A DNA stretch of 32,851 nt from Octopus bimaculoides (taxonomy: Eukaryota). Position 1 is the stretch's first letter. Each line of letters starts with the position of its first letter. The DNA is taken from NCBI RefSeq assembly GCF_001194135.2, contig NC_068994.1:5837309-5870159 (forward strand), in the 5' to 3' direction. This document shows positions 4,765 through 32,738 of the stretch, piece by piece. The position numbers were made by a program, and so were the translations under genes. The notes beneath the pieces are model-generated. The model was not told the origin of the DNA. It saw only the letters and a program-made list of their open reading frames with translations, and did no database searches.

Positions 4765-4814
4765 ACTGTATTCACCCAAAGAACAAGGTTGTAAAGATGC
4801 TTGGCGACCAAGAA
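4765..4814 (+). CDS. Exon, (x)CIHPKNKVVKMLGDQE, phase 1 to 0; in-frame ATG at 4797 could be the start
   Basis: Acceptor tctttctttcatctattattccAG, donor gaa|GTaaat. Only this frame joins the next phase-0 exon, and the join creates E|NYDTF. Confidence 0.6.
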
Positions 4815-7800
4815 GTAAATATATCTTTTATTTTCTTTATCATTTAATTGTTCCAGTCATTGGGCTGCAGTCATGCTGTAGCACTGACTTGAAGGGCTTA
4901 GTCGAACAAATTGACTCTAATACTTATTTTTTAAGTCTGACACTCATTTTATTGGTACCTTTTGCCAAAACACTAAGTTGCAGGTACATACACACACACA
5001 CACACATTTGGCACATGGCCTTGTGTGTCAAGAGACTGTGCATTATGTGTGTTTATGCGTGTTTATTGAGCCAAAACACCTAAAGCTCCACAAATATACA
5101 TAAAAAATGTATACACAAATATACATAAAAATATTATGCTCATTATTATATTAGGGGATATATAATATATTTTTTTTATTTTTCAAAATGAAACGAAACC
5201 AACAGCAAGATGGAAAACACTGATTATTTTGGCATATTTCCACTTTATATTTGCAAAGTTTTCTCTTACTGCTTTTAATTGCAAAATCATTAATCAGATC
5301 CTCATTATAACACCATGAACATTTTGAAATTATATTTCCAATCATAGAAACCACTTTGAATATCATTTCAGCAGGCTTAAAGTGATTTCTTTTGTGCCGT
5401 AAACCAGGGGTTTTCAAACTGTGGTCCGCGGACCACAGGGGGTCCGCAAGGACAAGACAGGGGGTTCATGGACAGCAGATGCTTTTTATGGGCAATTTGA
5501 TTTTATATATGTTTTTTAATTAAAATCTTTTAATTGACAATAAACCTATTTGTTAAATACTGTTAATTAAATAAATGTAAAAATATGTTATTTTAAGCAA
5601 ATATTTATGTATAAATTTCATAAGCGTTTATAAGGGGGTCCTAAGGTAAAGCCTGAAATATAAAGGGGTCTGCAAGTCAAAAAGTTTGAAAACCCCTGCT
5701 GTAAACCATTTGCCATTTCTCCGGTGCCCCCCTCCTTTCCTTGATGCCCTAAGTACATACTTATTTTTCTCAATTTTTAATCCGATGCTGGACATAAGTA
5801 ATTATAACAATTAGCAAAATCATAGTACAAGCCGTTGTTGCTGTTGTTGTGATTGTTGTTGTAGATGTTACTTCTGTTGTTGTTATTTTTGTAGTTATTA
5901 TTTCTGTTGTTGCTGTTAACACCATTGCTATCGCTACTATCACATGCTTGTACTGTTCGTTTTCAGAACTATGATACTTTTGAATATGATAAATCTGACG
6001 GGGAGGTAAGTAAATGTTTCTGTTATCCTTCTGCCCCCTCCCACTTTACTACTTCTTACTCCCCCTCTTATAACCTCACAATATTTCTAGTACTTTCCGT
6101 TGTGTTCTATAATTAATTAATTAGTTAATTCTAATGAAGGCTTGTCCTTTGGACAATTTGCAACAAGTATGGACTTGACAGCAAAAAATTGGTACAACCA
6201 CAAACCTGAAGGCATTGTCGAAAATGGAAATGCCAAGATCCTATGGGATTTTATGATTCAGTGCGACCATGAGAAAGAGAATAGGAAGCTGGACATAGTC
6301 TTAATTGAGAAAGAAAACAAACTATGCTGGATCCAGCCTTCTTCAGGTGTCTTGTGATTCACCTTAGTGCCTTGCCTGGGTTTGAACTTAGAACCTCTAG
6401 GTGACTGTACTGCATTTAGCAATACCTTTATCCACTACACTATGCCAGTAGACAGTGAATTTTCAAGGTTTATAAGCCTTCATTGATGTCGATAGATTTA
6501 CTTGTAACATGAATAATTTTGGACTTTGTTTCTGTTCGTCAATTAACCTTTGACCTGTTGTTGTATTGTCGTGTTGACTGATCCCTTTATTAACCTAATG
6601 ACCTATGCTTCATTATAACTTTTTGTTTAATTATTTAATCAATTATTCAATTAATTCTCTGCAGATGTATGAACCACTAACCGACACTGTTATCGTAAGT
6701 ATTTTTGCTGTTTTTGTGGTTGTTGCTGTTGTTGTTGTTGTACTATTATTGTTGTAACTGTCGTTGTTGTTGTTGCTCTTGTTGTTGTGACTTATTTTTG
6801 TTGTTATTGACACAAGGCTACAGATTTAGGACAAGGGAGGCGAGGCGTAAGTTCAAAGACAGGAAATATTTGAGGCCTCCTCGAATCTATTTTAATATAA
6901 TAAAGAATATAAAAGAGGAGAGAGAAGGAACAGAAAATCATTGAAGGGGTCATATAATGTGGGATGAAAGAACTCGGACAAATAAACAAATAATAATAAT
7001 AATAAATTCATTTCCTGCTATGACTATGGTATCTGACCCTCAGAGCTGGCTGGTCAAATGTCATCAACCATTCAGCCTGTCCTGGGTCACTTGCCCTATA
7101 GTGTCCATCTTCCCTGTACTCCTCTCTAACCCCTTTATTTTCCAGTCCTTCCTCACCAAAACATTATCCCACTGAAATTATCTATTTGTTAGTATGTAGT
7201 GGTTGGTACTAGGAAGGGTATTCAGCCAACCATGCCAAATTAGATTGGAACCTGCTGTCCAACTGCTTAGTAGTTTCAGTCAAATTGTCTAACCCAATGG
7301 TTCTCAAAGTGGGCGTTATTGCCCCCCCCCCCGGGGGGAGGGGTGAAAAGTTCCAAGTGAGATTTGAGGAAAAGTGGGGTGATAATGGCTGTAGCAATTC
7401 ATGTAAAAGCAACAAAATAATGGGTTCATTAGGTCAAGTTTTATTTGTGAAACACAGTTGCTTTGAATTTGTTTCAGAAAGAGGTCTGTGTTTGTGATGG
7501 TTAGTTGGGGTGGGGGTGCTAGGAATGTGGGGTGGATGTCAAGGGGAGGGGCAGTCTGAAAGTTTTTGAGAACTACTGGTCTAACCCATGCCAGCATTGA
7601 AAGCAGATGCTATATGATGATGATGATGATGATGATGATGATAAGGTATAATAAAGTTAAGGTGAAGATCAGATAAACAGTGTGTGTGTTTACTGGCAAA
7701 AATTACCATCCCCAACTATAACAATATCTGTTTCAACACACGATTTCACACCAAGAATTTTGCAAAACAAATACGTAAATGTAATTCCATTTAATGTGTA

Positions 7801-8435: not shown

Positions 8436-8480
<45 letters not shown>

Positions 8481-9080
8481 CAAGAATAAGGGCAGGGAAT
8501 CGTCAATTAATAATAGAATTAACAATTAACAATTTTGCCAAGTAGTTCAGTATGAAAAAACCTTTATCGGTAAAACCATTTATCATCATAAATATACAGG
8601 GATTATATATATATATATATATTTGTGTGTCTGTGTCTGTCTCCGCAACATCGCTTGNNNNNNNNNNNNNNNNNNNNNNNNNNNNNNNNNNNNNNNNNNN
8701 NNNNNNNNNNNNNNNNNNNNNNNNNNNNNNNNNNNNNNNNNNNNNNNNNNNNNNNNNNNNNNNNNNNNNNNNNNNNNNNNNNNNNNNNNNNNNNNNNNNN
8801 NNNNNNNNNNNNNNNNNNNNNNNNNNNNNNNNNNNNNNNNNNNNNNNNNNNNNNNNNNNNNNNNNNNNNNNNNNNNNNNNNNNNNNNNNNNNNNNNNNNN
8901 NNNNNNNNNNNNNNNNNNNNNNNNNNNNNNNNNNNNNNNNNNNNNNNNNNNNNNNNNNNNNNNNNNNNNNNNNNNNNNNNNNNNNNNNNNNNNNNNNNNN
9001 NNNNNNNNNNNNNNNNNNNNNNNNNNNNNNNNNNNNNNNNNNNNNNNNNNNNNNNNNNNNNNNNNNNNNNNNNNNNNNNN

Positions 9081-9118
<38 letters not shown>

Positions 9119-11467
9119 CAAGAATAAGGGCAGGGAATCGTCAATTAATAATAGAATTAACAATTAACAATTTTGCCAAGTAGTTCAGTATGAAAAAACC
9201 TTTATCGGTAAAACCATTTATCATCATAAATATACAGGGATTATATATATATATATATATTTGTGTGTCTGTGTCTGTCTCCGCAACATCGCTTGGCAAC
9301 TGATGTTGGTGTGTTTACATCCCCGTAACTTAACGGTTCGGCAAAAGAGACCGATAGGCTAAGTACTAGGCTTACAAAGAATAAGTGCTGGGGTTGATTT
9401 GCTCGACTTGAGGCAGTGCTCCAGCATGGCTGCAGTCAAATAACTGAAACAAATAAAAGAATTCTGCTGATAGGCCAGTTGACTGCAGTACTTGTCCCGA
9501 AATAACATCTCTTAGCAACTTCAGAAGAGATGTTATCTCAGAACAAATACTGTTGTAACAGGGCCTATCAACAGCATGAATGATACATAGATGACTATTT
9601 TAATTAAATACTCTTTCTTTGTGCCAGATAATAAAATGCAATGAAACTCGATACCCTAATCTTCCTCTTACCAACAGCTCTCTGATACCTCAGTTAAAAA
9701 GATTTGTAAATGTTTTGTTTGTTTTATTGCTCACCTTTTTTTTTCACCATTCCAGATACCCAAGAAGAATGCTCCGCCCCTGCCACCCGCACGGAACAAA
9801 TACAAAGTAAGTAATTACCTAGATTCAGTTCTTTGATTTATACAGTGATTACTGACATGGGTGTAGCAAGGCAGCACAAAATGCACCCTGATGCACCCCT
9901 TAATGATTGTAGAATCATCATCATCATCATCGTTTAACGTCCGCTTTCCATGCTAGCATGGGTTGGACGATTTAACTGAGGACTGGTGAGCCAGATGGCT
10001 ACACCAGGCTCCAATCTGATTTGGCAGAGTTTCTACAGCTGGATGCCCTTCCTAACGCCAACCACTCAGAGAGTGTAGTGGGTGCTTTTACGTGCCACTG
10101 GCACGAAGGCCAGTCAGGCGGTACTAGCAACGGCCACGCTCAAAATGGTGCATTTTATGTGCCACCCACACAAGAGCCAGTCCGGGGGCACTGGCAACGA
10201 TCTCGCTCGAAAGTCCTTATATATATNNNNNNNNNNNNNNNNNNNNNNNNNNNNNNNNNNNNNNNNNNNNNNNNNNNNNNNNNNNNNNNNNNNNNNNNNN
10301 NNNNNNNNNNNNNNNNNNNNNNNNNNNNNNNNNNNNNNNNNNNNNNNNNNNNNNNNNNNNNNNNNNNNNNNNNNNNNNNNNNNNNNNNNNNNNNNNNNNN
10401 NNNNNNNNNNNNNNNNNNNNNNNNNNNNNNNNNNNNNNNNNNNNNNNNNNNNNNNNNNNNNNNNNNNNNNNNNNNNNNNNNNNNNNNNNNNNNNNNNNNN
10501 NNNNNNNNNNNNNNNNNNNNNNNNNNNNNNNNNNNNNNNNNNNNNNNNNNNNNNNNNNNNNNNNNNNNNNNNNNNNNNNNNNNNNNNNNNNNNNNNNNNN
10601 NNNNNNNNNNNNNNNNNNNNNNNNNNNNNNNNNNNNNNNNNNNNNNNNNNNNNNNNNNNNNNNNNNNNNNNNNNNNNNNNNNNNNNNNNNNNNNNNNNNN
10701 NNNNNNNNNNNNNNNNNNNNNNNNNNNNNNNNNNNNNNNNNNNNNNNNNNNNNNNNNNNNNNNNNNNNNNNNNNNNNNNNNNNNNNNNNTGGGGAAGGCA
10801 TGGGTGGAGTGTGGGTTAGGCTGAGGGTGGGGTAGGGGGTGGGTGGTGGGTGTAAGGAATTGGATGGGGTGGAGTGGGAAGGTAGAGTAGGAGTGTGTTG
10901 GGGTGTGGTGGGATGAGCTTATGAGGGGGTGTTGACGATGAAGGGGGAAGGGGAAGGTGTATGTATGTATGTATGTAAGTGTGTGTGTGTGTATGTATTG
11001 GCACAGGTATTTTACTTGAAAATTTGCAAAATTTTGCTGAGTTCATTACCAAGGTGACAATGTAATTTAGTTTGTTAATAAAAATGCATTTACATATTTC
11101 AGTAACATCATCAAAAATAAAATAGACTTTATAAATTCATAATTTATCAAAAGTTCTATTATATATTTCAGTCAGATACACAGAAAAAGCCATTAGGTCT
11201 ACCAAAATTTTCCAAAGTAAGGACCTTTAAATTTGTTCCATTGTCCAGCAAGTGCTATATATGATATGCTCTCCACTTGCATGTTACAATGACTCACCCC
11301 CAACCCTGAACCAAACTACCTCCCATCATGTCCTTTGCTGACTTATTTGACATCAGACATTTTAGTACTTATCTCCCTCTCTGCTTATGCATGTGGGCAT
11401 ATTTCTTTTTATGTATCTGAGGAGGGGGCAATTATTTATGTCATTTGGTTTCAATTAATAAATTTTA

Positions 11468-11515
<48 letters not shown>

Positions 11516-13059: not shown

Positions 13060-13134
<75 letters not shown>

Positions 13135-14724
13135 GCTTCTTTCAATTTCCATCTAGCATATCCACTTCTATCTTCCAATTCTGTCTACCAAATCTGGAAT
13201 CATGTGGTTGGGAAGCAAGCTTCTTTCTGCATAGTCACACCTGCATCTATAATATATATCATATAATGGATTTCCAAGAAAGCTGGTGAAAAAGTTTACT
13301 ACAAACTCAATAAACAATATGTTGCAGACTTTTCTGTTAGTGATTTCCATTTCCTAGGTTAGTTGCCTTCACCATATCTTAGAGTCCAAGCCACCCTGGT
13401 AGGCTAAATGCATCCCTTGGCACCACACCAGAAATTTCTAAATCCTCACACACACACATGTATCAATCATGTAATTGGAAGGCTACGGGCCATCTCTTAA
13501 GTTCATCTGCCTTTTGACAGTTCAGCCCACAGGGTATCAAAAAAAAAATCGGTGTTTAAAGGTTTCTGTGAAAGCATTAAGATGTTTTTTAAAATTTACT
13601 TATGTCAACATAAACATAAAGCTTAACTTGAGATTTAAACTAATTTTTTCATTTCTTTAGGTTCCAGACTGTGATGAAAATTATGAAGAGTTTCCTTGCC
13701 TTACACAGGTAAATTGGTGTTCTTCTGTTCAATATATATTTCTTTAATGGCTGCCTTTTCTGAATAGATTTAGAAGATTCCTTCAGAAGTCTAACATTTT
13801 AAATAGAAATAAGCGAGATATTGGGTGAAAAATTAGCAAACCTCATTTGAATATCAGAGAAATATACCTAGTAGATATAGCAAAAAGGTTAGATATGTGT
13901 AAATATTGACAGATAATTACGAAATTTGTAATTTTTAAGTGATCTCATATGAGATCACTGGTAGGTAATGGGTTAAGCAAATGCTTGTCACCCCACACAC
14001 ACACACACACACACACACATATCATATCTAGGATCCTAATGAAAAAAGATCTATCATTCAATAATGTTCATAAATAATTAATTACTATCTCTAATTGCAA
14101 TACATTCCAAGTCTATTGCGCCGTTCACAACTATCAGCCAACTTTCATCTTTCGATTTTACTGTTTATTTCAGGATGATTTTATGGAAGAGAACTATGAA
14201 TGTTTTGATAATGATCTAGTGGTAAGTGATGCATTTAACATATTGGGGCTTGATGATTGGGGCTACTGTAGTGATTGATTGCTTAGTTATTAACACTTTT
14301 ACAGTCAGATTACTCAGTCACATGTAGCATTCATATATTCACATTCTTTTCAATTAATCACATATTATGTCAAACCATCCAATCCATGCCAGCATAAAAG
14401 GCAGACATATATATATATATATATATATATATANNNNNNNNNNNNNNNNNNNNNNNNNNNNNNNNNNNNNNNNNNNNNNNNNNNNNNNNNNNNNNNNNNN
14501 NNNNNNNNNNNNNNNNNNNNNNNNNNNNNNNNNNNNNNNNNNNNNNNNNNNNNNNNNNNNNNNNNNNNNNNNNNNNNNNNNNNNNNNNNNNNNNNNNNNN
14601 NNNNNNNNNNNNNNNNNNNNNNNNNNNNNNNNNNNNNNNNNNNNNNNNNNNNNNNNNNNNNNNNNNNNNNNNNNNNNNNNNNNNNNNNNNNNNNNNNNNN
14701 NNNNNNNNNNNNNNNNNNNNNNNN

Positions 14725-20965: not shown

Positions 20966-21001
<36 letters not shown>

Positions 21002-23452: not shown

Positions 23453-23505
<53 letters not shown>

Positions 23506-26500
23506 CAAATCCATTCATGAGACTTTCATAGGCCTGTGGCTATAGTAAGAGACACTTGACCAAGGTGTACCACATTGTAGAATTGAACCCAAAACCATGT
23601 GGTTGAGAAGCAAGTTTCTTACCCACACAGTCATAACTACAAACACATACATACATATATATAAAGATTTTGCTTTGGCATTGCACTACTAATAAGTTGC
23701 TGTTTGAACTCAATACATATGTGCTTCAAGAATGAAAGCTTGGGTGAGTACAGAGCATAATAGGAAGTTAAATGAATGACAAGTGAACAGGAATTATGTA
23801 ATCAACTGCATTAGCTTACAGATGTTTCTGCTACAAGATGCAGTGCATTCAGAGCTGAGTGCTTGTGCATTATGTTATGGTTTCCTCTGAGGAAGCTGAT
23901 GAAGTCGGCTGCATATTTCCTGTCTCCTCGTCCTTCCTTTAATTTCTTATTTCTACTTGGATGTGTGAGTGTGTTTGTGTAACATTTAGCTTTTACTTGT
24001 TTCATTCATTGGACTGCAGCCATGCTGGGGCTCTGCCTTGAAGGGTTTTAGTCAAGCAAATCAACCACAGTGCTTATTTTTTTAAAACCTGGTACTTAAT
24101 CTATTGGTCTCTTTTGCTGAACTGCGAAGTTACTTGTGTTGACAAGCATTGGTGTGGGACAAAAATGCACACAACACATACATGCACACAGACATGCACA
24201 CACACACACAAGTAAACACACACACACATATATATATACATTTAGCTACCTATCTACCTATTTATATATATATAACTATATATATACCACTCCCTCTCTC
24301 ACCTGAAAGGTCTTTGTCTTGCAAGCTAGTTGGCAACTCCAAAGGTGCACCACATAAAAAGCTCCTATGTTGGTGCCACATAAAAAGCACCCAAAACACT
24401 CTGTTAGGTGGTTGAAGTTAGGAAGCTCATCCAACTATGGAGATCATGTCAGAACAGACAATTAAAGCCTGATGCAGTGCTCCAGCTGGTCAAATCTTTT
24501 CAAACCATCCAACCATGTCAGCATGGAAAACAGACGTTAAATGATGATATGTATGACTGGTTTCTTTCAAATTCAGTCAACCAAATCCACTTACAAGATT
24601 TTGGTTTGCTTGGTATTATAGTGGAGTACACTTGCCCAAGGTGACATCCAGCGGGACTGAACTCAGAACTATGTGATTGGGAAGAAAACTTCTTACCACA
24701 CAGCCACGCCTGCCCTTTTATTGCATATAATACTTACAAATGTATGTAATAGATCAATCACTGAGGTTAAATACTCAGGGACAGCATCTGCTTGAAAACA
24801 ACAGTTAAGTTACATTTAATGTAGTATTAAATATCTCATGAGAAGTATTTCAAAAATATTTATGCAATGAGGAAAAACAACATTAGCTAAAATAACATTA
24901 GTCAAACTTCACTTTGCCATTTACTCTCCTGGGATGATGGTGGCTGATAACACAAAAGTACCAGTCACACACTGGAGTCAGTTTAAATTCATCTTCATCA
25001 CAAAACAACTTACTCTACCATATAAACATTTAACATTATTTACAAATGCAAAACATTTTGTTTCCATTTTCACTGGTTACACAGGTTTCAATTTAATTAT
25101 CTAACTTATGCAATCACTAACTTCATTAAATAATTAATTACAGCTCAACTCATTTTAATTTTTTTCTAATATCATTTAGTTTATATTTTCCAGTTTCACT
25201 TGGTGACAATGCATGCAATCCTTCCCTGGGTGAATTATTGCAAGCACGCAATAAGCTAAAACCTACAGTCAACGAGAATAGGGTTTCTATTCCTACAGAG
25301 TCTGACCCCACCCGTAAGTGTATGTAATTTTGTTTCAGGTTCCACAAATGTTGATCATGCTATGATTGAATAGCTTAAGGTATTAATGACTGGATCATGA
25401 TGAAGAGATTCTAAGCAAAAGATTTCTCTTCCTGCTTCTTACTCTCTTTCATTTCCTGATTCTTCTGTCATATCAATTAATTAATTAATTTTATTTATTT
25501 ATTTTATAATGCAATTTGTGAATAAATGCATCATTGATTACAGCTTTCCAACATACCAGCCTCAGGTTCATCCATTCATATTTCTTCATCTTCATCCATC
25601 CATATTTCTTCATCTTCAGGGACCATTATTTATGCAAGCATCCTGGGAGCAAAACCCTCATATACACCCATCAAAACTTCCTGTCAAAAGCGACTATGAG
25701 CAGATGTTTTGGCTTGATCTCCCAAGCAACACCAACCATGGCTCTTGATATTACTCTACTATCTTGCTCCTAATCCTGATCTACCTGTCAGTCTCCTCAC
25801 AGTTGTTGTTTCCCATAAAATATTTTCCTGTGATTCTTCCCTCAGATATTCCGATCACGCACCCATACAAATGGAGCTGTGACTTCTTGTTGCTGAAGAG
25901 TTATGAGTCAACCTGGAGTGACTCCCTGATCTCCAAGCTACACACTATTTCAAATAATATCATTTCAGTGTCCCTTCAAAAGAACCCGTTTCAGTCACTT
26001 TTCTTCACCAGTTTATTGTTGTTAAATGCCATGCTCTCTCTGTTACAGAAAGAGGAGCTCCATGGAAACAATTGAAAGCTCTGAGTATATTTTTAACATT
26101 ATGATATGCCTGTTTCTCTTAAAATATTCATACCAACTGAGAACCCAGTCGATGGTATTAGAAATATCAATGAGAGACCTATATGTGAAAAAAAAAAAAA
26201 AAACCTGTAGATATTCTCATTAGTTTATTCAATACATCCTTATATATATTTCATTAATGAATAAATCTGTAGTGCCAGGATTACCTTACAATCGAATTAC
26301 GTCATCAACTCATCAGAGTTTATACAATGAACAAAATATTCATAGTAGTGAGATAGTGATATTGCTCCTGCAGAATGTAAAATTTTATAACTCAGGTCAG
26401 AAAATTTATTCAAATAGATTTACTGCTTGTCGAAGTGTCTGTAACTTATCATAATAGATCTATTGGGAATTCAATCAAGGAACCATGTTGCGTTCTATAT

Positions 26501-26697
26501 AATTCTCAGAGGGATTTACAAATATCAGCCATCAAGGCTCAATGACAAGGAAAGAAATAGAAACATACTCAAAATTTTCTTTTATTTCTAATGTCAAGAA
26601 AAAAAGGGAAAAATTCTAAAGAAACGAACTGCTTCAATGTTTTTCTTTTTACTTAACATTTACCCATACATACATACATATTTGTACATATAGACTG

Positions 26698-26771
<74 letters not shown>

Positions 26772-29700
26772 CTCTAACATATATATGCCTACACACATAC
26801 ACATGTATATACCATTATCATCTTTATCATCTTCCATACGGGCATTGGGAACGTTTTGTGAGGAGGAGTGAAGCCAGATAACTGCATCAGGCTCCATTGT
26901 CTGCTTTGGCATAGTTTCTATGGTTAGATGCCCTTCCTAATCCCATCCACATTACTGGGGGTACTGGTGGGTAGGTTTTTTTGGGGGGGTTTTTTTCAGG
27001 GTACCATCACTGGAAAACTTCTTCAATGAAGTGGTCTTAATAGTTAAGAAAAAAATCAAAATGTAAAAAAGGAATTATGTAATGAGAATAGGCACAAGAG
27101 AAAAATAACAATTTTACTTTGCAATGAAAATCAATTAATTAGTTTTGATATTTTTTTTGTATTCTTTGAAAGGAAAATTATGATGTTATAATTTTTTTGT
27201 TTTTTTTAACCTCAGATTTGATTGCTTTTTTGAAGGGGAAACCAAAACTTTATTTTATTGGAATTGATAAGGGCTTGCAAAGTATAATAGCACCTCAGCT
27301 TATGCTCTTGTTTCTTTCCTTCTTTAACCCTTTAGTGTTTAAACCAGCTATATCCGGCCCAAATATTCTACACATTTTATGCCCAAACTGGCCAGAACCA
27401 GCCTCTCACACCTACCCTACAATGTCATTCTAAAAACAAGCAATTACATCATTCCTATCTTGAAGCGACAAAATAATAATAGATAATTTTTTTTAAATGT
27501 GAATAAATAAGAATTACACTAAAGGGTTAAACACTAAAGTTTCTTGATTATTTCTCAATCATTAAAATTTCTGCTTAATTCTTTTATAACCATATTTCAA
27601 ACGAAGGACTGTTTATATGTAATCTGAATTAGTTTAAAGAATAATCAAGAATTTTGGAGACATTTGTAAAAATAACTGACTTTTCCACACTTCTTTTTTA
27701 GCATGACATAATGAAAATTTTTTACAACAAAGTTATGATGGAAGATTTTGATTTAAATGTGCATGTTTTAAAAGAGGTGTTTCTGTATGACAAAACTAGT
27801 GATGGTCTTCTATTGGTTAGCATGAAAAAGTTTAACTCTTTGGTTCTTGACTGCTTTTTACCAATGGATCCTTTTAATTTCTGTCTTACTCTACTGCTTC
27901 TTCCCCTTGTTAAAAAAAAAATTCTGTTATATTTTTATAATTCAATATTATTAGGAATTGTATTAAAAGATTTGTTAAAATGTTTTGTGTATTGTAAAAG
28001 TATAACCAATTTATTGCTCATAAGGTTTAACAAAATTTTATAGGAACCTCAAGAGTCATTTGGGTCTCAGTTGAGAACCATGGGTTGAACTCAAATCCAG
28101 CTAACACTGTTTGTTCAGTCCTTAATCAGATGTTTTCATACTTTGCTGTTTACATATGATTAATTAAGATAATTTTCTCTTTCTAATTTTTTGTTGATGC
28201 TGTTGTTCTCCAGTCAAACATCCTGATGCAGCCAAAAACAAAGAGAAGCCTCAACCATCACAAAAACCTTCGTTCATATCTGAAATAAATAACAAATTTA
28301 AAAACATCCCCTTTCCAGGAAAGGAGTCTTCCCCAGCAATAAATCGAAAGAAAAGCTTCGGTTCTGAGCCCACAAATAAAGGTACCTAGTTATTTCTTAT
28401 ACTTTTTCACTGCTGGAAATGGTAATAGAAGTGGATCAGGTATGTACTTGGTGTTGTAGTCAGTGTTTATGTTTGTGAACTATTGAAAACACTCCATTAG
28501 AGGTATATACATATTAAGATCAATGATTTACTAGATTTTTGATAGCTTCACATGAAGTGAATTATAAACATTACCTATACTCTTTTACTTGTTTCAGTCA
28601 TTTTGACTGCGGCCATGCTGGGGCACCACCTTTTAGTCGAGCAAATCAACCCCAGGACTTATTCTTTGTAAGCCTAGTACTTATTCTATCGGTCTCTTTT
28701 GCCAAACCGCTAAGTTGCGGGGACGTAAACACACCAGCCTCGGTTGTCAAGCGAAGTTGGGGAGGACAAACACAGACACACAAACATATACACACACATT
28801 ATATATACACATATATATGACGGGCTTCTTTCAGTTTCCGTCTACCAAATCCACTTACAAGGCTTTNNNNNNNNNNNNNNNNNNNNNNNNNNNNNNNNNN
28901 NNNNNNNNNNNNNNNNNNNNNNNNNNNNNNNNNNNNNNNNNNNNNNNNNNNNNNNNNNNNNNNNNNNNNNNNNNNNNNNNNNNNNNNNNNNNNNNNNNNN
29001 NNNNNNNNNNNNNNNNNNNNNNNNNNNNNNNNNNNNNNNNNNNNNNNNNNNNNNNNNNNNNNNNNNNNNNNNNNNNNNNNNNNNNNNNNNNNNNNNNNNN
29101 NNNNNNNNNNNNNNNNNNNNNNNNNNNNNNNNNNNNNNNNNNNNNNNNNNNNNNNNNNNNNNNNNNNNNNNNNNNNNNNNNNNNNNNNNNNNNNNNNNNN
29201 NNNNNNNNNNNNNNNNNNNNNNNNNNNNNNNNNNNNNNNNNNNNNNNNNNNNNNNNNNNNNNNNNNNNNNNNNNNNNNNNNNNNNNNNNNNNNNNNNNNN
29301 NNNNNNNNNNNNNNNNNNNNNNNNNNNNNNNNNNNNNNNNNNNNNNNNNNNNNNNNNNNNNNNNNNNNNNNNNNNNNNNNNNNNNNNNNNNNNNNNNNNN
29401 NNNNNNNNNNNNNNNNNNNNNNNNNNNNNNNNNNNNNNNNNNNNNNNNNNNNNNNNNNNNNNNNNNNNNNNNNNNNNNNNNNNNNNNNNNNNNNNNNNNN
29501 NNNNNNNNNNNNNNNNNNNNNNNNNNNNNNNNNNNNNNNNNNNNNNNNNNNNNNNNNNNNNNNNNNNNNNNNNNNNNNNNNNNNNNNNNNNNNNNNNNNN
29601 NNNNNNNNNNNNNNNNNNNNNNNNNNNNNNNNNNNNNNNNNNNNNNNNNNNNNNNNNNNNNNNNNNNNNNNNNNNNNNNNNNNNNNNNNNNNNNNNNNNN

Positions 29701-30765
29701 NNNNNNNNNNNNNNNNNNNNNNNNNNNNNNNNNNNNNNNNNNNNNNNNNNNNNNNNNNNNNNNNNNNNNNNNNNNNNNNNNNNNNNNNNNNNNNNNNNNN
29801 NNNNNNNNNNNNNNNNNNNNNNNNNNNNNNNNNNNNNNNNNNNNNNNNGTAACAAAATTCAAAAAGTTTCTCTCTCTCTCTCTCTCTTTCTCTTTCCCTC
29901 TCTCTATTTCTCTCTTTTCACTTTCTCTTTGTCTTTCTCCCTCTCACTTTCTCCCTTTCTCTTTCTCTATCTTTCTCTCTGCCTCTCCTTCTCTCACTCC
30001 CTCTCTCTCTTTCTCTCCCTCTCCTTTTTCTACAACAACCAAAATGGCCCCTGCTCCTTAAATTGGCTCAGTTCAAGCTTCATCCACACAGTCTTTCCCA
30101 TATCATTTGTCTCTCCTCATTTCACCCACCTCATTGTGTCCATTCTCCTAATAAAGCCAATATATCATTAATGTACCTCAAGTTATCAGGGCTGAAAGAA
30201 CTATTGTAGTATAATGTACCTCAAGGTGCCAGCGGTAGATAGATCTAATGTATTATAATGTATTCCATGGTACCCTAATGAAGACACATCTAATGTACTA
30301 TTGTGTTCCTCAAATATCAGGTAGATTGAGCTAATGAAGTATACTGTACCTCAGAGTACCAGGGTAGGTAGAACACAAGTGTTGTAATGTACCTCGGGGT
30401 TCCTTGATGTAGGTACAGTTTCAATGATGTATGAATTCTAAATTGTTTTGTTCTTTATTGTAGGATGACACAGATGATGAAGACCCAAGAGAGGTTTATG
30501 CTGATGCTTGTGATGTCCGGGTATGTTCCAATTGAGTATTCAGGGTGTATTAAATTCTTTTATCTCTTTTACTTGTTGCAGTCATTAGACTGTGGCCATA
30601 CTGGGGCACCATCTTGAAGAATTTTTAGTCTGATGAGTCAACCCCAGTATTTCATTTTCTTTTAAATCCTGGTTTTTATCCTCTCGGCATCTTTTGCCAA
30701 ACCACTAAGATACAGAGATGTAAACATATCGACACTACTAGCTGTCAAAAACTGATGATGGACAA

Positions 30766-30797
<32 letters not shown>

Positions 30798-32738
30798 ACT
30801 TAAGCTGAGGGCAGCAAGCCTTTGGCAATTGTGCCATGGGAAAAACTCAGATCTACTCAGAAGGCTATGGTTGAAAATACTCGGCCAAAGTGCTAGTCCC
30901 ACTGAGTGACACCTTGGGCAAATGTCTTCTACTATAACCCCAGGTCAACCTGGGGTTGACCTTTGGCAATACTGCCATGGGTAAAACTCAGATCAAGGAG
31001 TGGTACGATCACTTTGAACATGGCCACACCTCTGTGGAGAGTGAGACATGCTCAGGCAGGCTGAAATGTGGGGCTGATTACTCCACAACTGGAAGAAGAC
31101 CCAACACTAGTCAATGACAGGATCATGACAACAAGACTATCATTCTACAAAAAAACACTGTGGATGTAGACTTTTAGTTGATCTAAATATTTATATCTGT
31201 TCAGTTAATTTGTTGCTGTATGTCATTCTTATAACTTGTTCAGTAAATATTTGTTGTTATGGTTGCATTTTGTTATTATCTCTTATCTTACATTCATCTT
31301 CTCCATGGATTTTGATTGAGTATGATACTTTTCTGCTTGTTTTGAAAAAAGAAAAAGGCTGTTAACATCAAAATACTCCTCAGGCGGTCTGGCAGTTGAG
31401 ATACATACATGTATACAAGATATGTATGTTTATATGTATCTGAATTTGTATGTGCATATATATATATATATATATACATGCATCTATCTATTTATCTATT
31501 TATGTTACAGTTGTTCCTGCAAAATAAACCATGGTACTTTGGAAAATTAGGCCGTAAAGCAGAGGAAAGTTTGCTGAATGAAATTAAACAGGTATGGTTT
31601 ACCTTCATATACATGTTTGTTTGTGTGTGTGTGCATGTGTGTTCTTCCTAGTTTTTATATTTTATTCTTATGTTCATTTTCTTCTATTTCATAAATGGTG
31701 TCACCTACAACATTAGATACCCTTCTGTTTCTTCTATTGGAATTATTTATCTTCTTCATACACTTATTTGATTGTTGTTTTTCCCCCTTTATATTTCTAC
31801 ATTTTTCCAGGTTTGAGCTTTGCCTATCTGACTCTGCATGTTATTTGTTTCTGTATCTTTTCTTTGCCTCATAATCTTCTCATAATCTTATGCATGGTAT
31901 CTCTCTCTATGTGTTTGTGAAAGACACTGTACCTCTTCCTCCATAGAAAAGAAAAACAGCCAATTCCATCCTGTCTAAACAGCTACATTCCGTTTCTTTG
32001 CTTCTTTATCACAGAATGGTGCCTTCTTGTTGAGAGACAGCAGCCAAGCATCATGCACTCATCCATTTACATTGACTGTTTACTCCAATAACCATTTTTA
32101 CCGACTCAAAATCCGACATCTTGAAAGTGGAAAATTTGTTGTTGGAGAGAAAAAGGATTCAGAAATTGTAAGTATATAAGGAGTTAGTTATAGGTTTACT
32201 TATAGAATTATTGATTTATAGATATTGTTTTTGTACCTAGGGTAAATGTGTTTCTTTGTTGTTGTTTAATTAATAATCTTAGTGTTAAATCCTTCCTAGA
32301 ATTAAGATTGTATGAATGTGGAGATATCTAAGGAATGTTTGTTCCCAAACAACACTTATTTTATATTTGATGGATATTTGTCCTCATCTTGTTTGTGAAA
32401 GGTACTGTTTCTCCTCCTCCATAGAAAAAAAAAACAGCCAATTCCATCCTGTCTTAGCAATTACAGCCCTTTTCTTTGCTCCACTGTCACTACTACAACC
32501 ACCATCACTACCACCACCACCATCACTACCACTATCACCATCATCACCACCACATTCTGATTCTGTGAAGTATTATTCTGTAACTCATTACACTGTCTAT
32601 TTCCAGGAATTCAACACTATTCAAGACCTGATCACCTACTATGAAACTGAACCACTGCTTCTGCTAGCAACAACCGATAACAGCAACTCTTGCACAACTC
32701 TAAAGTACATTCCAGAGAAATCTAAGACACCGAACTGA
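4765..32738 (+). CDS. Multi-exon gene for an SLP-76/BLNK/CLNK-family-like SH2 adaptor protein (5' end unresolved; exons listed separately)
   Basis: 15 exons with GT-AG boundaries and compatible phases except at two junctions. Acidic Tyr motifs and PxxPxR motifs precede a C-terminal SH2 with FLLRDS. The SH2 resembles SLP-76/BLNK from recalled sequences (DGTFLVRDSS..PYVLMVLY, PLVLID..STRLKY). Symbol left blank because orthology to a single vertebrate paralogue cannot be set by eye. Confidence 0.85.
5405..5698. mobile_element. hAT-type MITE
   Basis: Perfect 16-bp TIR caggggttttcaaact / agtttgaaaacccctg; 8-bp TSD ccgtaaac / ctgtaaac. Confidence 0.9.
5967..6005 (+). CDS. Exon, NYDTFEYDKSDGE (39 nt, phase 0-0)
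   Basis: Acceptor gttcgttttcAG, donor gag|GTAAGT; acidic Tyr motifs. Confidence 0.85.
6150..6333 (+). pseudogene. Fragment of an R4/Dong-like non-LTR retrotransposon ORF C-terminus (restriction-like endonuclease region)
   Basis: WTICNKYGLDS / frameshift / KNWYNHKPEGIVENGNAKILWDFMIQCDHEKENRKLDIVLIEKENKLCWI fits the WYeHkP..VvEn...kIlWD..IqtD...aRrPDIv motif of RLE-type elements; PD has decayed to LD. Confidence 0.8.
6665..6694 (+). CDS. Exon, MYEPLTDTVI (30 nt, phase 0-0)
   Basis: Acceptor ttaattctctgcAG, donor atc|GTAAGT; YEPL resembles the YEPP motifs of SLP-76/BLNK. Confidence 0.8.
7295..7578 (-). mobile_element. hAT-type MITE, same family as 3834-4145, opposite orientation
   Basis: Perfect 8-bp TSD gtctaacc at 7287-7294 and 7579-7586; ends caatggttctcaaa / tttgagaactactg. 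Confidence 0.85.
8441..9297. other. Probable assembly artefact: identical sequence on both sides of an N-gap (about 8441-8657 and 9081-9297)
   Basis: From aaaatatacaagaataagggcaggg to ccgcaacatcgcttg the two copies read identically. Confidence 0.75.
9292..9462 (+). mobile_element. SINE 3' part (cephalopod-type dispersed repeat); boundaries approximate
   Basis: gttggtgtgtttacatccccgtaactt...gaataagtgctggggttgat...ccagcatggctgcagtcaaataactgaaac; many reverse copies in the window (about 340-430, 4840-4990, 12885-13060, 23990-24170, 28573-28770, 30560-30760). Confidence 0.75.
9756..9806 (+). CDS. Exon, IPKKNAPPLPPARNKYK (51 nt, phase 0-0)
   Basis: Acceptor ttttttcaccattccAG, donor aaa|GTAAGT; PxxPxR class II SH3 ligand. 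Confidence 0.88.
9915..10212 (-). mobile_element. SINE or LINE-3' repeat with (GAT)n tail; boundaries approximate
   Basis: catcat tail followed by ttaacgtccgctttccatgctagcatgggttgga...ggatgcccttcctaacgccaaccac; related copies near 640-740, 1630-1830, 2980-3110, 15175-15345, 19680-19870, 22520-22720, 24350-24550, 26810-26960. Confidence 0.75.
10790..10990 (+). repeat. G-rich low-complexity tract with a canonical G-quadruplex motif at 10825-10850
   Basis: GGG t GGGG ta GGGGG t GGG tggt GGG. Confidence 0.7.
12372..12416 (+). CDS. Exon, DFKSGSLPRNNPIPQ (45 nt, phase 0-0)
   Basis: Acceptor cattggctgtttgcAG, donor cag|GTAGGT; open in phase 0. Confidence 0.7.
12885..13245 (-). mobile_element. Composite SINE: tRNA-like head, central (TA)(TG) microsatellite, conserved 3' part; boundaries approximate
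   Basis: Head remnant catgtggttgggaagcaagc..ct, then gggcttctttcaattt, (ta)n(ca)n, and gactgtggccatactgg...ccccaggact. Confidence 0.7.
13661..13708 (+). CDS. Exon, VPDCDENYEEFPCLTQ (48 nt, phase 0-0)
   Basis: Acceptor ttttttcatttctttAG, donor cag|GTAAAT; ENYEEF motif. Confidence 0.88.
14174..14221 (+). CDS. Exon, DDFMEENYECFDNDLV (48 nt, phase 0-0)
   Basis: Acceptor ttactgtttatttcAG, donor gtg|GTAAGT; ENYECF motif. Confidence 0.9.
15373..15523 (-). mobile_element. tRNA-derived SINE head copy
   Basis: Reverse strand reads gtgattgtgtggtaagaagcttgcttcccaaccacatggctccaagttcagtcctac, with A-box and B-box-like motifs; other copies near 22315-22450, 23505-23635, 24555-24712. Confidence 0.75.
15572..15646 (+). 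CDS. Exon, DNDPPLKMKPPLPDRKYGKEKPKID (75 nt, phase 0-0)
   Basis: Long T tract then cttgccAG, donor gat|GTATGT; PPLPDR SH3 ligand. Confidence 0.88.
16692..16757 (+). CDS. Exon, PRKPVFTQRKPLLNSCVERDTM (66 nt, phase 0-0)
   Basis: Acceptor tgtgtctccctttacAG, donor atg|GTATGA; open and Pro/basic like neighbouring exons. Confidence 0.75.
17469..18494. mobile_element. Non-autonomous Tc1/mariner-type element spanning an N-gap
   Basis: Left TA|cagggtgggccaaaaatcatgaa; right end reverse complement caggatgggccaaaactcatgaa (21/23); right flank TG rather than TA. Confidence 0.65.
18765..19037. repeat. Degenerate pentanucleotide (TAGTG/TATTG-like) simple repeat
   Basis: Direct reading of about 5-nt periodicity. 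Confidence 0.7.
19902..20419. repeat. Local inverted duplication of a SINE half (arms about 19902-20090 and 20215-20419)
   Basis: Arms share variants absent from other copies here (ctgtccaccaaaaaatccactcac; ggtcagcccaaaactgtagtag). Confidence 0.85.
20418..20921 (-). pseudogene. Inactive maT / DD37D-type Tc1/mariner transposase fragment
   Basis: MRKGQFLSQ...WFSSNKKNF...IMVFGVITSDG...LEEVVLPW...YVWQQDSAPCHTS...IWLPNSPDCNP. First catalytic D appears as N; third D missing. Spacing from QQD to the expected NPLD Asp is 37 residues. Confidence 0.88.
20922..21280. repeat. Compound (TATG)/(TG)/(TA) microsatellite with a ~40-bp higher-order repeat (atatgtgtgtgtatgtgtttgcatatatatatatatatgtttgtatttgc)
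   Basis: Direct reading. Confidence 0.9.
21281..21828 (+). mobile_element. Internally deleted mariner (DD34D, Hsmar1/cecropia-like) with both TIRs
   Basis: TA flanks; TIRs tccagttgagtaaaaagtaagcaacgttttga and reverse gcaggctgagtaaaaagtaatcaacgttttga. 21467-21754 encodes RPHVSLMTLQKMRELGYEVLPHPAYSPNLSPTNYHFFKHLDGFL*EKK...GINKLVTCWQKVVDCNGTYFDK*. Confidence 0.92.
22866..22940. repeat. 19-bp tandem repeat x4 (two identical gctaacctcgctttgatac, two diverged)
   Basis: Direct reading. Confidence 0.8.
25194..25313 (+). CDS. Exon, (x)SLGDNACNPSLGELLQARNKLKPTVNENRVSIPTESDPT (120 nt, phase 1-1)
   Basis: Acceptor tttatattttccAG, donor acc c|GTAAGT; joins the 28214 exon in frame (c+tc = Leu). Confidence 0.8.
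25640..26060 (-). pseudogene. Decayed RTE-clade (Rex3-like) LINE ORF2 C-terminal fragment; boundaries approximate
   Basis: Minus strand with stops and frameshifts: LEIRESLQVDS*LFSNKKSQLHLYGCVIGISEGRI.. then ILWETTTVRRLTGRS, matching EIReSLqVEPLLL..E.SQLrW.GHv.RM...R......GRP. Confidence 0.65.
27328..27526 (+). mobile_element. piggyBac-like MITE
   Basis: TTAA|ccctttagtgt ... acactaaaggg|TTAA; perfect 11-bp TIR and TTAA TSD. Confidence 0.88.
28214..28381 (+). CDS. Exon, (L)KHPDAAKNKEKPQPSQKPSFISEINNKFKNIPFPGKESSPAINRKKSFGSEPTNK (168 nt, phase 1-1; 3' boundary uncertain)
   Basis: Acceptor tgctgttgttctccAG; only one open frame. An in-frame TAG at 28387 forces a donor at or before g|GTacct (28382), which is weak. 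Confidence 0.75.
28573..28866 (-). mobile_element. Composite SINE (3' part, microsatellite, end of head part) running into an N-gap
   Basis: tttcagtcattttgactgcggccatgctggggcacc...ggggacgtaaacacacc..., (ca/ta), then gacgggcttctttcagtttccgtctaccaaatccac. Confidence 0.8.
29866..30030. repeat. CT-rich microsatellite
   Basis: Direct reading. Confidence 0.9.
30168..30420. repeat. Degenerate ~43-bp tandem repeat x6
   Basis: Core tgtacctcaa-like motif at 30172, 30215, 30259, 30304, 30345, 30388 (spacings 43, 44, 45, 41, 43). Confidence 0.75.
30464..30520 (+). CDS. Exon, DDTDDEDPREVYADACDVR (57 nt, phase 0-0)
   Basis: Acceptor ttttgttctttattgtAG, donor cgg|GTATGT; acidic Tyr motif. Confidence 0.9.
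31511..31591 (+). CDS. SH2 exon 1, LFLQNKPWYFGKLGRKAEESLLNEIKQ (81 nt, phase 0-0)
   Basis: Acceptor tttatgttacAG, donor cag|GTATGG; WYxG..R..AE..L start of an SH2 domain. Confidence 0.93.
31912..32480 (+). repeat. 91-bp direct repeat flanking SH2 exon 2 (31912-32002 and 32390-32480)
   Basis: Shared tgtttgtgaaag...ctccatagaaaa.aaaaacagccaattccatcctgtct...tttctttgct. Confidence 0.85.
32015..32167 (+). CDS. SH2 exon 2, NGAFLLRDSSQASCTHPFTLTVYSNNHFYRLKIRHLESGKFVVGEKKDSEI (153 nt, phase 0-0)
   Basis: Acceptor cttctttatcacAG, donor att|GTAAGT; GxFLxRxS signature with the betaB5 Arg. Confidence 0.96.
32497..32552. repeat. (CCA/TCA)n trinucleotide repeat, intronic
   Basis: Direct reading; gives the PPSLPPPP stretch of ORF 32316-32738. 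Confidence 0.85.
32607..32738 (+). CDS. SH2 exon 3 / last coding exon, EFNTIQDLITYYETEPLLLLATTDNSNSCTTLKYIPEKSKTPN*
   Basis: Acceptor ctgtctatttccAG; F.tI.dLI.yY alphaB helix, PLLL and LKY betaG; TGA at 32736-32738. No AATAAA before the window end. Confidence 0.95.
   Translation, partial: EFNTIQDLITYYETEPLLLLATTDNSNSCTTLKYIPEKSKTPN

What the first reader, a model, noticed from the sequence alone, without database searches (positions are those of the whole stretch)
4765..32738. Hidden SLP-76/BLNK-type immunoreceptor signalling adaptor in an apparent cephalopod genome
Seen: 15 spliceable exons, mostly invisible in the ORF track, encode acidic Tyr motifs, PxxPxR motifs and a C-terminal SH2. Established: this order defines vertebrate SLP-76/BLNK/CLNK adaptors, which are phosphorylated by Syk/ZAP-70 downstream of ITAM receptors. 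Inference: an animal without lymphocytes carries the scaffold, suggesting a haemocyte or other ITAM/Syk-type signalosome. Invertebrate homologues may already be annotated as BLNK-like, so the novelty is likely in the motif content rather than the gene's existence.
Basis: partly seen in the sequence, partly recalled or inferred. Interest (0 to 1): 0.75.

Follow-up and report, generated by a model that had tools for sequence, protein, structure and literature searches.

The report
Octopus BLNK/SLP-76-family adaptor gene, fragmented
The window holds the Octopus bimaculoides copy of a signalling-adaptor gene that sister octopus genomes already annotate as "B-cell linker protein"; it looks hidden here only because its exons are tiny and assembly gaps swallowed two of them, which split the public gene model in two.

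Summary
On the + strand, 4797-32738, 16 coding exons with canonical AG/GT sites are readable, and 11 of them are 57 nt or shorter. They encode acidic Tyr motifs, two PxxPxR motifs and a C-terminal SH2 domain. They align end to end with O. sinensis "B-cell linker protein isoform X2", about 81% identical over readable residues.

All seven gaps lie in introns. The visible exons still do not make one ORF. Two short exons known from orthologues (28 nt and 59 nt) are absent, and exon phases show that coding sequence is missing. The two introns concerned contain gaps 16110-16564 and 17607-18385, and gap 28867-29848.

Public O. bimaculoides models split the gene. One is an "uncharacterized" N-terminal protein that reads into intron 9. 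The other is a 124-aa SH2-only protein that starts inside an acceptor tract.

The SH2 domain is closest to mouse BLNK by sequence and by fold, and it groups with LCP2/BLNK/SH2D6. It is not a 1:1 BLNK orthologue: it clusters with a second cephalopod paralogue. It has no SAM domain.

Homologues are widely auto-annotated in molluscs, so the gene itself is already known. The Syk/ITAM role is inferred only. One modest new point is a mollusc-wide ExYxDA motif 15 residues before the SH2 domain, which resembles the ExYDDV ligands of vertebrate SLP-76/BLNK SH2 domains.

The parts
4765..4814 (+). First coding exon (E1). ATG at 4797, encodes MLGDQE, donor GT at 4815. 4765 is a possible acceptor used by longer 5' isoforms in O. 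sinensis.
   Evidence: tblastn. The O. bimaculoides RefSeq model P0195 and the O. vulgaris isoforms start at this Met.
5967..6005 (+). E2: NYDTFEYDKSDGE, two acidic Tyr
6665..6694 (+). E3: MYEPLTDTVI, the YEP motif that corresponds to vertebrate YEPPP
9756..9806 (+). E4: IPKKNAPPLPPARNKYK, a PxxPxR motif. PPLP is invariant in both cephalopod paralogues.
11172..11216 (+). E5: SDTQKKPLGLPKFSK, a cassette exon skipped in P0195 and in O. vulgaris P0154/P0156
12372..12416 (+). E6: DFKSGSLPRNNPIPQ
13661..13708 (+). E7: VPDCDENYEEFPCLTQ, an acidic Tyr motif
14174..14221 (+). E8: DDFMEENYECFDNDLV, an acidic Tyr motif
15572..15646 (+). E9: DNDPPLKMKPPLPDRKYGKEKPKID, the second PxxPxR motif; ends in phase 0
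   Evidence: The RefSeq model P0195 reads through this donor into 15647-15910.
15647..21913 (+). Intron holding gaps 16110-16564 and 17607-18385. Expected site of a missing 28-nt exon (TKPQPIVPK+T in O. sinensis and O. vulgaris).
   Evidence: Phase 0 -> 1 mismatch. No candidate in readable sequence.
21914..21982 (+). EY: (F)SASGASPSKGTDIKGLVHHFNS, a 69-nt cassette exon, phase 1 -> 1
   Evidence: Present in O. sinensis isoform X2 (P0194) and absent from X4
25194..25313 (+). EX: (I)SLGDNACNPSLGELLQARNKLKPTVNENRVSIPTESDPT, a 120-nt cassette exon, phase 1 -> 1. Its motif is shared with the LCP2-like paralogues.
   Evidence: (best six-frame hit to the motif HMM, E 0.066)
28214..28381 (+). E11: basic/Pro-rich linker KHPDAAKNKEKPQPSQKPSF...TNK; ends in phase 1
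   Evidence: (E 2.6e-17)
28382..30463 (+). Intron holding gap 28867-29848. Expected site of a missing 59-nt exon ((A)PKRNSFG.SSIPQPSNTEQ).
   Evidence: Phase 1 -> 0 mismatch. No candidate found.
30464..30520 (+). E13: DDTDDEDPREVYADACDVR, the juxta-SH2 ExYxDA motif
31511..31591 (+). E14: start of the SH2 domain (LFLQNKPWYFGKLGRKAEESLLNEIKQ)
32015..32167 (+). E15: SH2 core with FLLRDS (pTyr-binding Arg)
32607..32738 (+). E16: SH2 C-terminal part and the BLNK-type tail (...CTTLKYIPEKSKTPN), then the stop codon

Best explanation
This is the Octopus bimaculoides gene for a cytosolic SLP-76/BLNK-family scaffold protein. It is the orthologue of the O. sinensis gene that RefSeq names 'B-cell linker protein'.

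Shown here:
- The longest isoform has about 18 coding exons spread over 28 kb and encodes about 421 residues.
- The N-terminal half is disordered, with no Pfam domain.
- It carries six Tyr residues in acidic contexts (NYDTF, EYDKS, MYEPL, NYEEF, NYECF, EVYADA) and two PxxPxR motifs.
- Three exons (E5, EY, EX) are cassette exons.
- The protein ends in a BLNK-type SH2 domain with the pTyr-binding Arg intact.

Inferred by homology:
- A Syk-family kinase, and/or Src- or Tec-family kinases, phosphorylates the acidic tyrosines after receptor engagement.
- The phosphotyrosines recruit SH2 effectors. The YEP site would serve Tec-kinase or PLC-gamma-type SH2 domains, and the other sites Vav, Nck or Src-type SH2 domains.
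- The PxxPxR motifs hold Grb2-type SH3 adaptors constitutively.
- The C-terminal SH2 domain anchors the complex to an ExYDDV-like phosphosite on a partner.

Why it looks 'hidden': the exons are very small and the assembly has gaps. Two short exons are missing from the readable sequence, so the public annotation splits the gene into an N-terminal 'uncharacterized protein' and an SH2-only protein.
For: Gene structure:
- The model aligns end to end with O. sinensis BLNK X2, 315 identities in 423 columns, and only the two missing exons are unaligned.
- Both public O. bimaculoides fragments are reproduced exactly from the window. P0195 equals E1-E4 and E6-E9 plus intron read-through. A0A0L8FP21 equals the ATG at 31502 plus E14-E16.

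Family assignment:
- Pfam finds SH2 at E 7e-16.
- BLNK SH2 2eo6 is the best match by sequence and by fold, with TM 0.82.
- The top library hits are named LCP2, BLNK and SH2D6.
- The NJ bootstrap separates the family from outgroups in 85% of replicates.

Motifs:
- YEP in an acidic context occurs in 46 of 150 family representatives.
- DYEPPP is the Itk-binding site of SLP-76 (PMC5431462).
- The PxxPxR motifs were found.

Context: an ITAM receptor signalling through Syk has been shown in oyster haemocytes (PMC6994640).
Against: - No expression or junction-read data for O. bimaculoides were available.
- Two exons are not visible, so an intact ORF in this species is inferred rather than shown.
- There is no SAM domain and no Gads-type RxxK motif.
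- The +3/+4 prolines of YEPPP are replaced (YEPL).
- The kinase, the partners and the cell type are all inferred from vertebrate biology.
- No paper on a molluscan BLNK/LCP2 homologue was found.
Confidence: 0.88

Rival explanations
1. The locus really holds two separate genes, as in the public O. bimaculoides annotation: an N-terminal proline/tyrosine-rich 'uncharacterized protein LOC106882076' and an independent 124-aa SH2-only protein.
For: Both models exist in public databases and are reproduced exactly from the window.
Against: - P0195 ends by reading through a consensus GTATGT donor into intron sequence.
- The SH2-only model starts at an ATG inside the polypyrimidine/acceptor tract of E14.
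- In O. sinensis, O. vulgaris and Argonauta the two halves form one protein.
- The intervening exons EY, EX, E11 and E13 are intact in the window.
Confidence: 0.03
2. The gene is a decaying pseudogene in O. bimaculoides. On this view the frame breaks between E9 and EY/E11 and between E11 and E13 are real losses of exons, not assembly gaps.
For: Direct joins of the visible exons shift frame into stop codons. No candidate for either missing exon was found in readable sequence.
Against: - All 16 visible exons are open, keep AG/GT sites and are about 81% identical to O. sinensis, with conservative changes.
- Both problem introns contain N-runs large enough to hide a 28-nt or 59-nt exon.
- At least one gap in the window is an obvious assembly artefact.
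Confidence: 0.05
3. It is the strict one-to-one orthologue of vertebrate BLNK, as the RefSeq name implies, and a separate gene is the orthologue of SLP-76/LCP2.
For: - RefSeq names it 'B-cell linker protein' and names the paralogue 'lymphocyte cytosolic protein 2'.
- The best solved-structure match is BLNK.
- It lacks a SAM domain, like mammalian BLNK.
Against: - In the NJ tree the window clade joins the cephalopod LCP2-like clade plus two unnamed relatives in 71.5% of replicates. It joins vertebrate BLNK in 0 of 200.
- Vertebrate LCP2, BLNK, SH2D6 and hagfish BLNK-like cluster together.
- Both cephalopod paralogues share the EX motif, the PPLP motif and the juxta-SH2 motif.
- No SLP-76 SH2 structure appears among the PDB hits (best 60 by sequence, top 50 by fold). 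'Best hit is BLNK' therefore cannot discriminate between family members.
Confidence: 0.05
4. The SH2 domain belongs to another adaptor family (SHB/SHD/SHE/SHF, SHC, Grb2, Nck and so on), and the Tyr/Pro motifs are coincidental low-complexity sequence.
For: SH2 domains are all alike at low resolution. Many SH2 structures match at E about 1e-7 to 1e-6.
Against: - There is a 26-bit margin for BLNK over every other solved SH2 domain.
- The fold match runs over 127 columns, including the C-terminal extension, against about 110 columns for other SH2 domains.
- The named top hits are only LCP2, BLNK and SH2D6.
- The outgroups split off in 85% of bootstraps.
Confidence: 0.02

Closest known systems
Octopus sinensis 'B-cell linker protein' isoforms X2/X4 (XP_029644983 and relatives), O. 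vulgaris CAI9733275-79, Argonauta hians GAB1604389
   Same: Orthologues. They have the same exon order, the same motifs and the same SH2 domain. Identity to X2 is about 81% over readable residues, and the same cassette exons are used.
   Different: In O. bimaculoides the public models are split and truncated, and two short exons are not in the readable assembly. The alternative 5' coding exons of O. sinensis (MFRHKKYNLPP..., MQEKLQ...) are not found in the window.
Vertebrate BLNK/SLP-65
   Same: It has the same layout: an acidic Tyr region that includes a YEP site, then a proline-rich region, then a C-terminal SH2 domain, with no SAM domain in mammals. BLNK is the closest SH2 domain by sequence and by fold.
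   Different: It is not a 1:1 orthologue. It is shorter, about 421 aa. It has YEPL rather than YEPPP. No N-terminal leucine-zipper-like segment is evident, because the first Tyr motif starts at residue 8. It carries a juxta-SH2 ExYxDA motif that vertebrate BLNK lacks.
Vertebrate SLP-76 (LCP2) and amphioxus bbslp76 (PMC5431462)
   Same: Same family, with a YEP-type Tec-kinase docking motif, a proline-rich region and a C-terminal SH2 domain.
   Different: It has no SAM domain and no WW domain. It has no YESP sites and no Gads-type RxxK motif.
O. bimaculoides 'lymphocyte cytosolic protein 2' XP_052828603 (P0005), the cephalopod paralogue
   Same: It shares the PPLP motif, the EX-type motif (DLTNARKCLKKV against ELLQARNKLKPT), the juxta-SH2 VYADxxD motif and the SH2 clade.
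   Different: It is a different locus. Identity is about 31%, and it lacks the ENYEEF/ENYECF repeats.

Membership tests
SLP-76/BLNK adaptor family (LCP2, BLNK, CLNK, SH2D6) | SH2 domain of the family-specific subtype | tested here: met
   - Pfam finds SH2 at E 7e-16.
- 2eo6 (BLNK) is the best match by sequence, 72 bits against 46 for the next hit.
- It is also the best match by fold, with TM 0.82.
- The named top hits are LCP2, BLNK and SH2D6.
- The family separates from outgroups in 85% of bootstraps.
SLP-76/BLNK adaptor family | SH2 domain at the extreme C-terminus, with no catalytic domain and the rest of the protein disordered | tested here: met
   The SH2 domain is the only Pfam domain and it ends about 30 residues before the stop codon. 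Residues upstream of the SH2 domain have pLDDT below 50.
SLP-76/BLNK adaptor family | N-terminal acidic region with several tyrosines, including a YEPP-type site | tested here: met
   Six Tyr residues sit in acidic contexts, and GEMYEPL is conserved in Octopus and Argonauta. YEP occurs in 46 of 150 family representatives. The +3/+4 residues are L/T, not PP.
SLP-76/BLNK adaptor family | Central proline-rich region with SH3-ligand motifs | tested here: met
   PLPPAR and PPLPDR (PxxPxR) are present. PPLP is invariant in the cephalopod paralogues. Binding was not tested.
SLP-76 (LCP2) subtype | N-terminal SAM domain | tested here: not met
   There is no SAM hit in the window model or in any molluscan homologue scanned. 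An echinoderm homologue, a caecilian LCP2 and a frog BLNK do give SAM hits in the same search.
SLP-76 (LCP2) subtype | Gads-binding RxxK motif and YESP sites | tested here: not met
   The readable model has no RxxK match and no YESP site. About 29 residues are unread.
BLNK subtype | One-to-one orthology with vertebrate BLNK | tested here: not met
   0 of 200 NJ bootstraps join the window clade to vertebrate BLNK. A clade of both cephalopod paralogue groups plus the unnamed relatives P0053 and P0065 appears in 71.5%. This is NJ on 110 columns only.
BLNK subtype | N-terminal leucine-zipper/basic membrane-targeting segment | not tested
   No profile was available. The protein begins MLGDQENYD, so only 7 residues precede the first Tyr motif.
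SLP-76/BLNK adaptor family | Phosphorylated by Syk/ZAP-70, and nucleates PLC-gamma, Vav, Nck and Grb2 complexes | not testable with these tools
   Needs biochemistry. The only context available is that oyster Syk acts downstream of an ITAM receptor (PMC6994640).

The most novel reading that the evidence does not exclude
Molluscan SLP-76-family adaptors, this one included, carry a strictly positioned tyrosine motif. The consensus is D-D-I-Y-D-D-A...D-P-L, and in this window it reads EVYADACD. The Tyr lies 13-18 residues, mostly 15, upstream of the SH2 Trp. The motif mimics the ExYDDV/DxYDDV ligands that vertebrate SLP-76 and BLNK SH2 domains bind on ADAP and HPK1.

Once phosphorylated, the motif could be bound by the protein's own SH2 domain. 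In cis this would give autoinhibition. In trans it would give head-to-tail oligomers. Either way the scaffold would self-assemble without an ADAP-like partner. Vertebrates would then have moved this ligand onto separate proteins.
Probability: 0.15. Interest if true: 0.45.

Novelty: already known. Interest (0 to 1): 0.17.

Why it matters
The practical value is a corrected gene model. In O. bimaculoides one adaptor gene is currently represented by two unrelated-looking entries, 'uncharacterized protein LOC106882076' and an SH2-only protein. Studies of cephalopod immune or tyrosine-kinase signalling that rely on that annotation would therefore miss it.

Biologically, it confirms that cephalopods keep two SLP-76-family scaffolds that arose independently of the vertebrate LCP2/BLNK/CLNK/SH2D6 set. 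The RefSeq names 'BLNK' and 'LCP2' should therefore not be read as orthology.

The family's presence in invertebrates is already documented: amphioxus (PMC5431462), sea star (PMC11593052) and automated annotation across molluscs. A specialist would not be surprised by the gene.

The conserved juxta-SH2 ExYxDA motif and the shared cassette-exon motif are small, testable leads on how the ancestral scaffold was wired.

Tried and rejected
1. A candidate for the missing 28-nt exon at 16050-16079 (TLSEPPPPKF, the best ungapped score). Rejected: there is no AG directly before it and no GT after AAAT, the frame is incompatible with E9, and it abuts a (TA)n gap edge.

2. A splice-aware enumeration of all AG...GT open segments of the right phase in both problem introns. 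It gave nothing resembling the orthologous exons. It did surface EY (as a variant in the wrong register) and part of EX.

3. Alternative 5' coding exons of O. sinensis and O. vulgaris (MQEKLQ..., MFRHKKYNLPP, MVTTSLRY). None was found upstream in the window. A weak match at 4360-4389 lacks a donor site.

4. The first word-indexed homology search returned only the window's own 124-aa protein. The exhaustive representative search was needed.

5. Fetching orthologous or newer-assembly DNA to place the missing exons.

6. A first AlphaFold run on a 5-sequence alignment gave pLDDT 51 and was discarded. The second run, on 25 molluscan sequences, gave pLDDT 84. It leaves the juxta-SH2 motif disordered, so it provides no in-silico support for docking.

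7. MAFFT did not align EX to the paralogue motif. A small motif HMM was used instead (E 0.066, the best of 1424 open segments). The inclusion of EX in O. sinensis X2 settled the point.

8. Pfam found nothing for the transposase-like minus-strand ORF.

9. A first Biopython bootstrap timed out and was redone.

Full report
SOURCE AND OBSERVATION

The window is 36% G+C and has seven N-runs. The spliced SH2-coding part is 100% identical to UniProt A0A0L8FP21 of Octopus bimaculoides, so the 'apparent cephalopod' guess is right.

The three 3' exons (31511-31591, 32015-32167, 32607-32738) splice in frame into a 121-residue SH2 domain. Pfam SH2 matches at E 7e-16.

FINDING THE UPSTREAM EXONS

A phmmer search of the SH2 domain against 1.84 billion representatives returned two close full-length relatives. 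They are O. vulgaris CAI9733275 (P0002, 93% identical in the SH2 domain) and Argonauta hians 'B-cell linker protein-like' (P0003). Their clusters also hold O. sinensis 'B-cell linker protein isoform X4'.

tblastn of P0002 on the window gave a strictly collinear + strand chain from 4770 to 32735. Every segment has an AG acceptor and a GT donor.

A later search with my spliced model found O. sinensis isoform X2 (P0194, 445 aa). It revealed two further cassette exons in the window: EY at 21914-21982 and EX at 25194-25313.

The final model aligns with P0194 from the first Met to the last residue, with 315 identities in 423 columns. That is about 81% of readable positions.

There are 16 readable coding exons totalling 1179 nt, about 4% of the 28-kb span. 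Eleven are 57 nt or shorter, which is why a 50-aa ORF track shows almost nothing.

THE GAP QUESTION

All seven gaps lie in introns, and no exon abuts or is cut by an N-run. The visible exons are nevertheless not one ORF.

- E9 ends in phase 0, while EY, EX and E11 all begin in phase 1.
- E11 ends in phase 1, while E13 begins in phase 0.
- The direct joins give stop codons.

At exactly these two places the orthologues have a 28-nt exon (TKPQPIVPK+T) and a 59-nt exon ((A)PKRNSFG.SSIPQPSNTEQ). Ungapped peptide scans and a splice-aware enumeration found neither in readable sequence.

The first intron concerned (15647-21913) holds gaps 16110-16564 and 17607-18385. The second (28382-30463) holds the 982-nt gap 28867-29848, which the scan program's note did not list. 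The simplest reading is that the two exons sit in unread sequence.

Assembly quality here is poor. Gap 8658-9080 is flanked by identical 215-bp copies, 8443-8657 and 9081-9295, which indicates an unmerged contig overlap.

WHY THE GENE LOOKS HIDDEN

Two public O. bimaculoides models can be rebuilt exactly from the window.

- RefSeq 'uncharacterized protein LOC106882076 isoform X2' (P0195) consists of E1-E4 and E6-E9 and then reads through the E9 donor into intron 15647-15910.
- The UniProt SH2-only protein starts at an ATG at 31502, inside the acceptor tract of E14.

So the gene is annotated in two halves, and neither is recognisable as an adaptor. The P0195 match also independently confirms my boundaries for E1-E4 and E6-E9.

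FAMILY ASSIGNMENT

- By sequence, the best solved structure is mouse BLNK SH2 (2eo6), at E 3e-19 and 72 bits. The next hit, RasGAP, scores 46 bits, and Src, Grb2 and PLC-gamma score lower.
- An AlphaFold model of E13-E16 built on 25 molluscan homologues has pLDDT 84, and above 90 in the domain.
- That model matches 2eo6 first, with E 6.5e-12, TM 0.82 and 2.1 A over 127 columns. All other SH2 domains come in at E of about 2e-7 or worse.
- The named members of the top 150 hits are LCP2 (tortoise, caecilian, killifish, Mytilus, O. bimaculoides), BLNK (pika, frog, hagfish, Mya, Ostrea, Argopecten) and SH2D6 (frog).
- In an NJ tree with 200 bootstraps, the family separates from Src, RasGAP and other SH2 domains in 85% of replicates.

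The same tree does not support the RefSeq name as orthology.

- The window clade is monophyletic in 100% of replicates.
- It joins the cephalopod 'LCP2-like' paralogues plus two unnamed relatives in 71.5%.
- It joins vertebrate BLNK in 0 of 200.
- Vertebrate LCP2, BLNK, SH2D6 and hagfish BLNK-like group together.

The octopus gene is therefore a family member derived from a molluscan or cephalopod duplication. This rests on NJ with 110 columns and should be repeated with maximum likelihood.

PROTEIN ANATOMY

SH2 is the only Pfam domain. There is no SAM domain, although an echinoderm homologue, a caecilian LCP2 and a frog BLNK give SAM hits in the same run.

Tyrosines in acidic contexts are QENYDTF, FEYDKSD, GEMYEPL, DENYEEF, EENYECF and REVYADA.

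The YEP core in an acidic context is a family hallmark. It occurs in 46 of 150 representatives, nearly all as acidic-x-YEPPP. In SLP-76, DYEPPP is the Itk-binding site and a ZAP-70 target, and it is conserved in amphioxus (PMC5431462).

Two PxxPxR motifs are present, PLPPAR and PPLPDR. No RxxK motif is present.

The SH2 domain keeps the FLxRxS arginine (alignment).

The EX exon carries ELLQARNKLK. This recurs in Argonauta (QLKAARGFLK), in the cephalopod LCP2-like paralogues (DLTNARKCLKKV) and in unionid bivalves. An HMM of that motif finds EX as the best of 1424 open segments in the window, at E 0.066.

A MOTIF WORTH NOTING

E13 encodes DEDPREVYADACD, with the Tyr 15 residues before the SH2 Trp.

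- The pattern [IVLE]Y[ADGM][DE][AGVC], placed 13-18 residues before the Trp, occurs in 21 of 150 representatives. Shuffling predicts 0.15.
- In 25 molluscan homologues (bivalves, gastropods, cephalopods) the Tyr is at least 90% conserved. The consensus is DDIYDDAxSxxxDPLxxxxWY.
- The vertebrate SLP-76 SH2 domain binds EVYDDV sites on ADAP, and the BLNK SH2 domain binds a DxYDDV site on HPK1 (PMC2211848).

The molluscan proteins therefore carry, next to their own SH2 domain, a sequence resembling that domain's vertebrate ligand.

AlphaFold leaves this segment disordered, with pLDDT below 50. That neither supports nor excludes a phospho-dependent interaction. This remains a lead only.

MECHANISM

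The architecture is shown; everything else is inferred by homology. The protein would act as a cytosolic scaffold. After receptor-proximal activation, a Syk-family, Src-family or Tec-family kinase would phosphorylate its acidic tyrosines. The phosphosites would then recruit SH2 effectors. The PxxPxR motifs would bind SH3 adaptors. The SH2 domain would tether the complex to an ExYDDV-like phosphosite.

An ITAM receptor that recruits Syk and activates ERK has been shown in oyster haemocytes (PMC6994640), so the upstream module exists in molluscs. No paper in the searchable library links a molluscan BLNK/LCP2 homologue to it.

NOVELTY

The gene is auto-annotated as BLNK or BLNK-like in O. sinensis, in Argonauta and in many bivalves. 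The family has also been described in amphioxus and sea star (PMC5431462, PMC11593052).

What is new here is limited to three points:
- a corrected, unified O. bimaculoides model;
- the evidence against 1:1 BLNK orthology;
- the conserved juxta-SH2 motif.

Interest is low.

Noticed in passing
window 8443-8657 and 9081-9295 (flanks of gap 8658-9080): The 215 bases on the two sides of this gap are 100% identical. This looks like an unmerged contig overlap, that is, a spurious gap plus a duplication. It lies in intron 3, so coding is unaffected.
   Followed up: partly
window 28867-29848: A seventh N-run of 982 nt lies inside the finding's span but was not in the list added by the scan program. 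It sits in the intron where a 59-nt exon is missing.
   Followed up: yes
window 20310-21317, minus strand: A 335-aa ORF sits in the large intron. By eye its C-terminal half looks like a Tc1/mariner-type transposase (WQQDSAPCH...), and its N-terminal half is translated microsatellite. Pfam gave no hit, so this rests on recollection only.
   Followed up: partly
window 30938-31114, + strand: An open segment in the intron before the SH2 exons gives a weak match to the Mos1-transposase HTH domain (HTH_48, E 0.024, below the Pfam cutoff). It is probably a mariner relic.
   Followed up: partly
window introns, e.g. 19902-20067 / 20419-20257, 9254-9460 / 28790-28581, 3824-4038 / 7588-7370, 15372-15525 / 20374-20218: Dispersed 150-230-bp repeat copies, 75-92% identical and in both orientations, resemble a SINE-like family. 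They account for many of the spurious ORFs, such as '...HAVGLNLEPCGWE...' and 'FQFPSTKSTYK'.
   Followed up: no
window 4137-4365 and 4392-4616: A 229-bp tandem duplication, 91% identical, lies immediately upstream of the first coding exon. Its significance, whether promoter, UTR or repeat, is unknown.
   Followed up: no
window 1-255 and 20920-21275: Long imperfect TA/TG-rich microsatellite blocks, about 80% alike, translate as '[10 protein letters not shown]'. Five of the seven gaps have (TA)n on at least one edge.
   Followed up: no
window 25194-25313 (exon EX) and 21914-21982 (exon EY): Two phase-preserving cassette exons are included in O. sinensis isoform X2 but not in X4 or the O. vulgaris isoforms listed. 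EX encodes a motif (ELLQARNKLK) shared with the cephalopod LCP2-like paralogues and with unionid bivalves.
   Followed up: partly
homologue P0004 (Dimorphilus gyrociliatus) and P0007, P0095, P0114: Some invertebrate relatives carry two BLNK-type SH2 domains in one protein, an arrangement not known for vertebrate family members.
   Followed up: no
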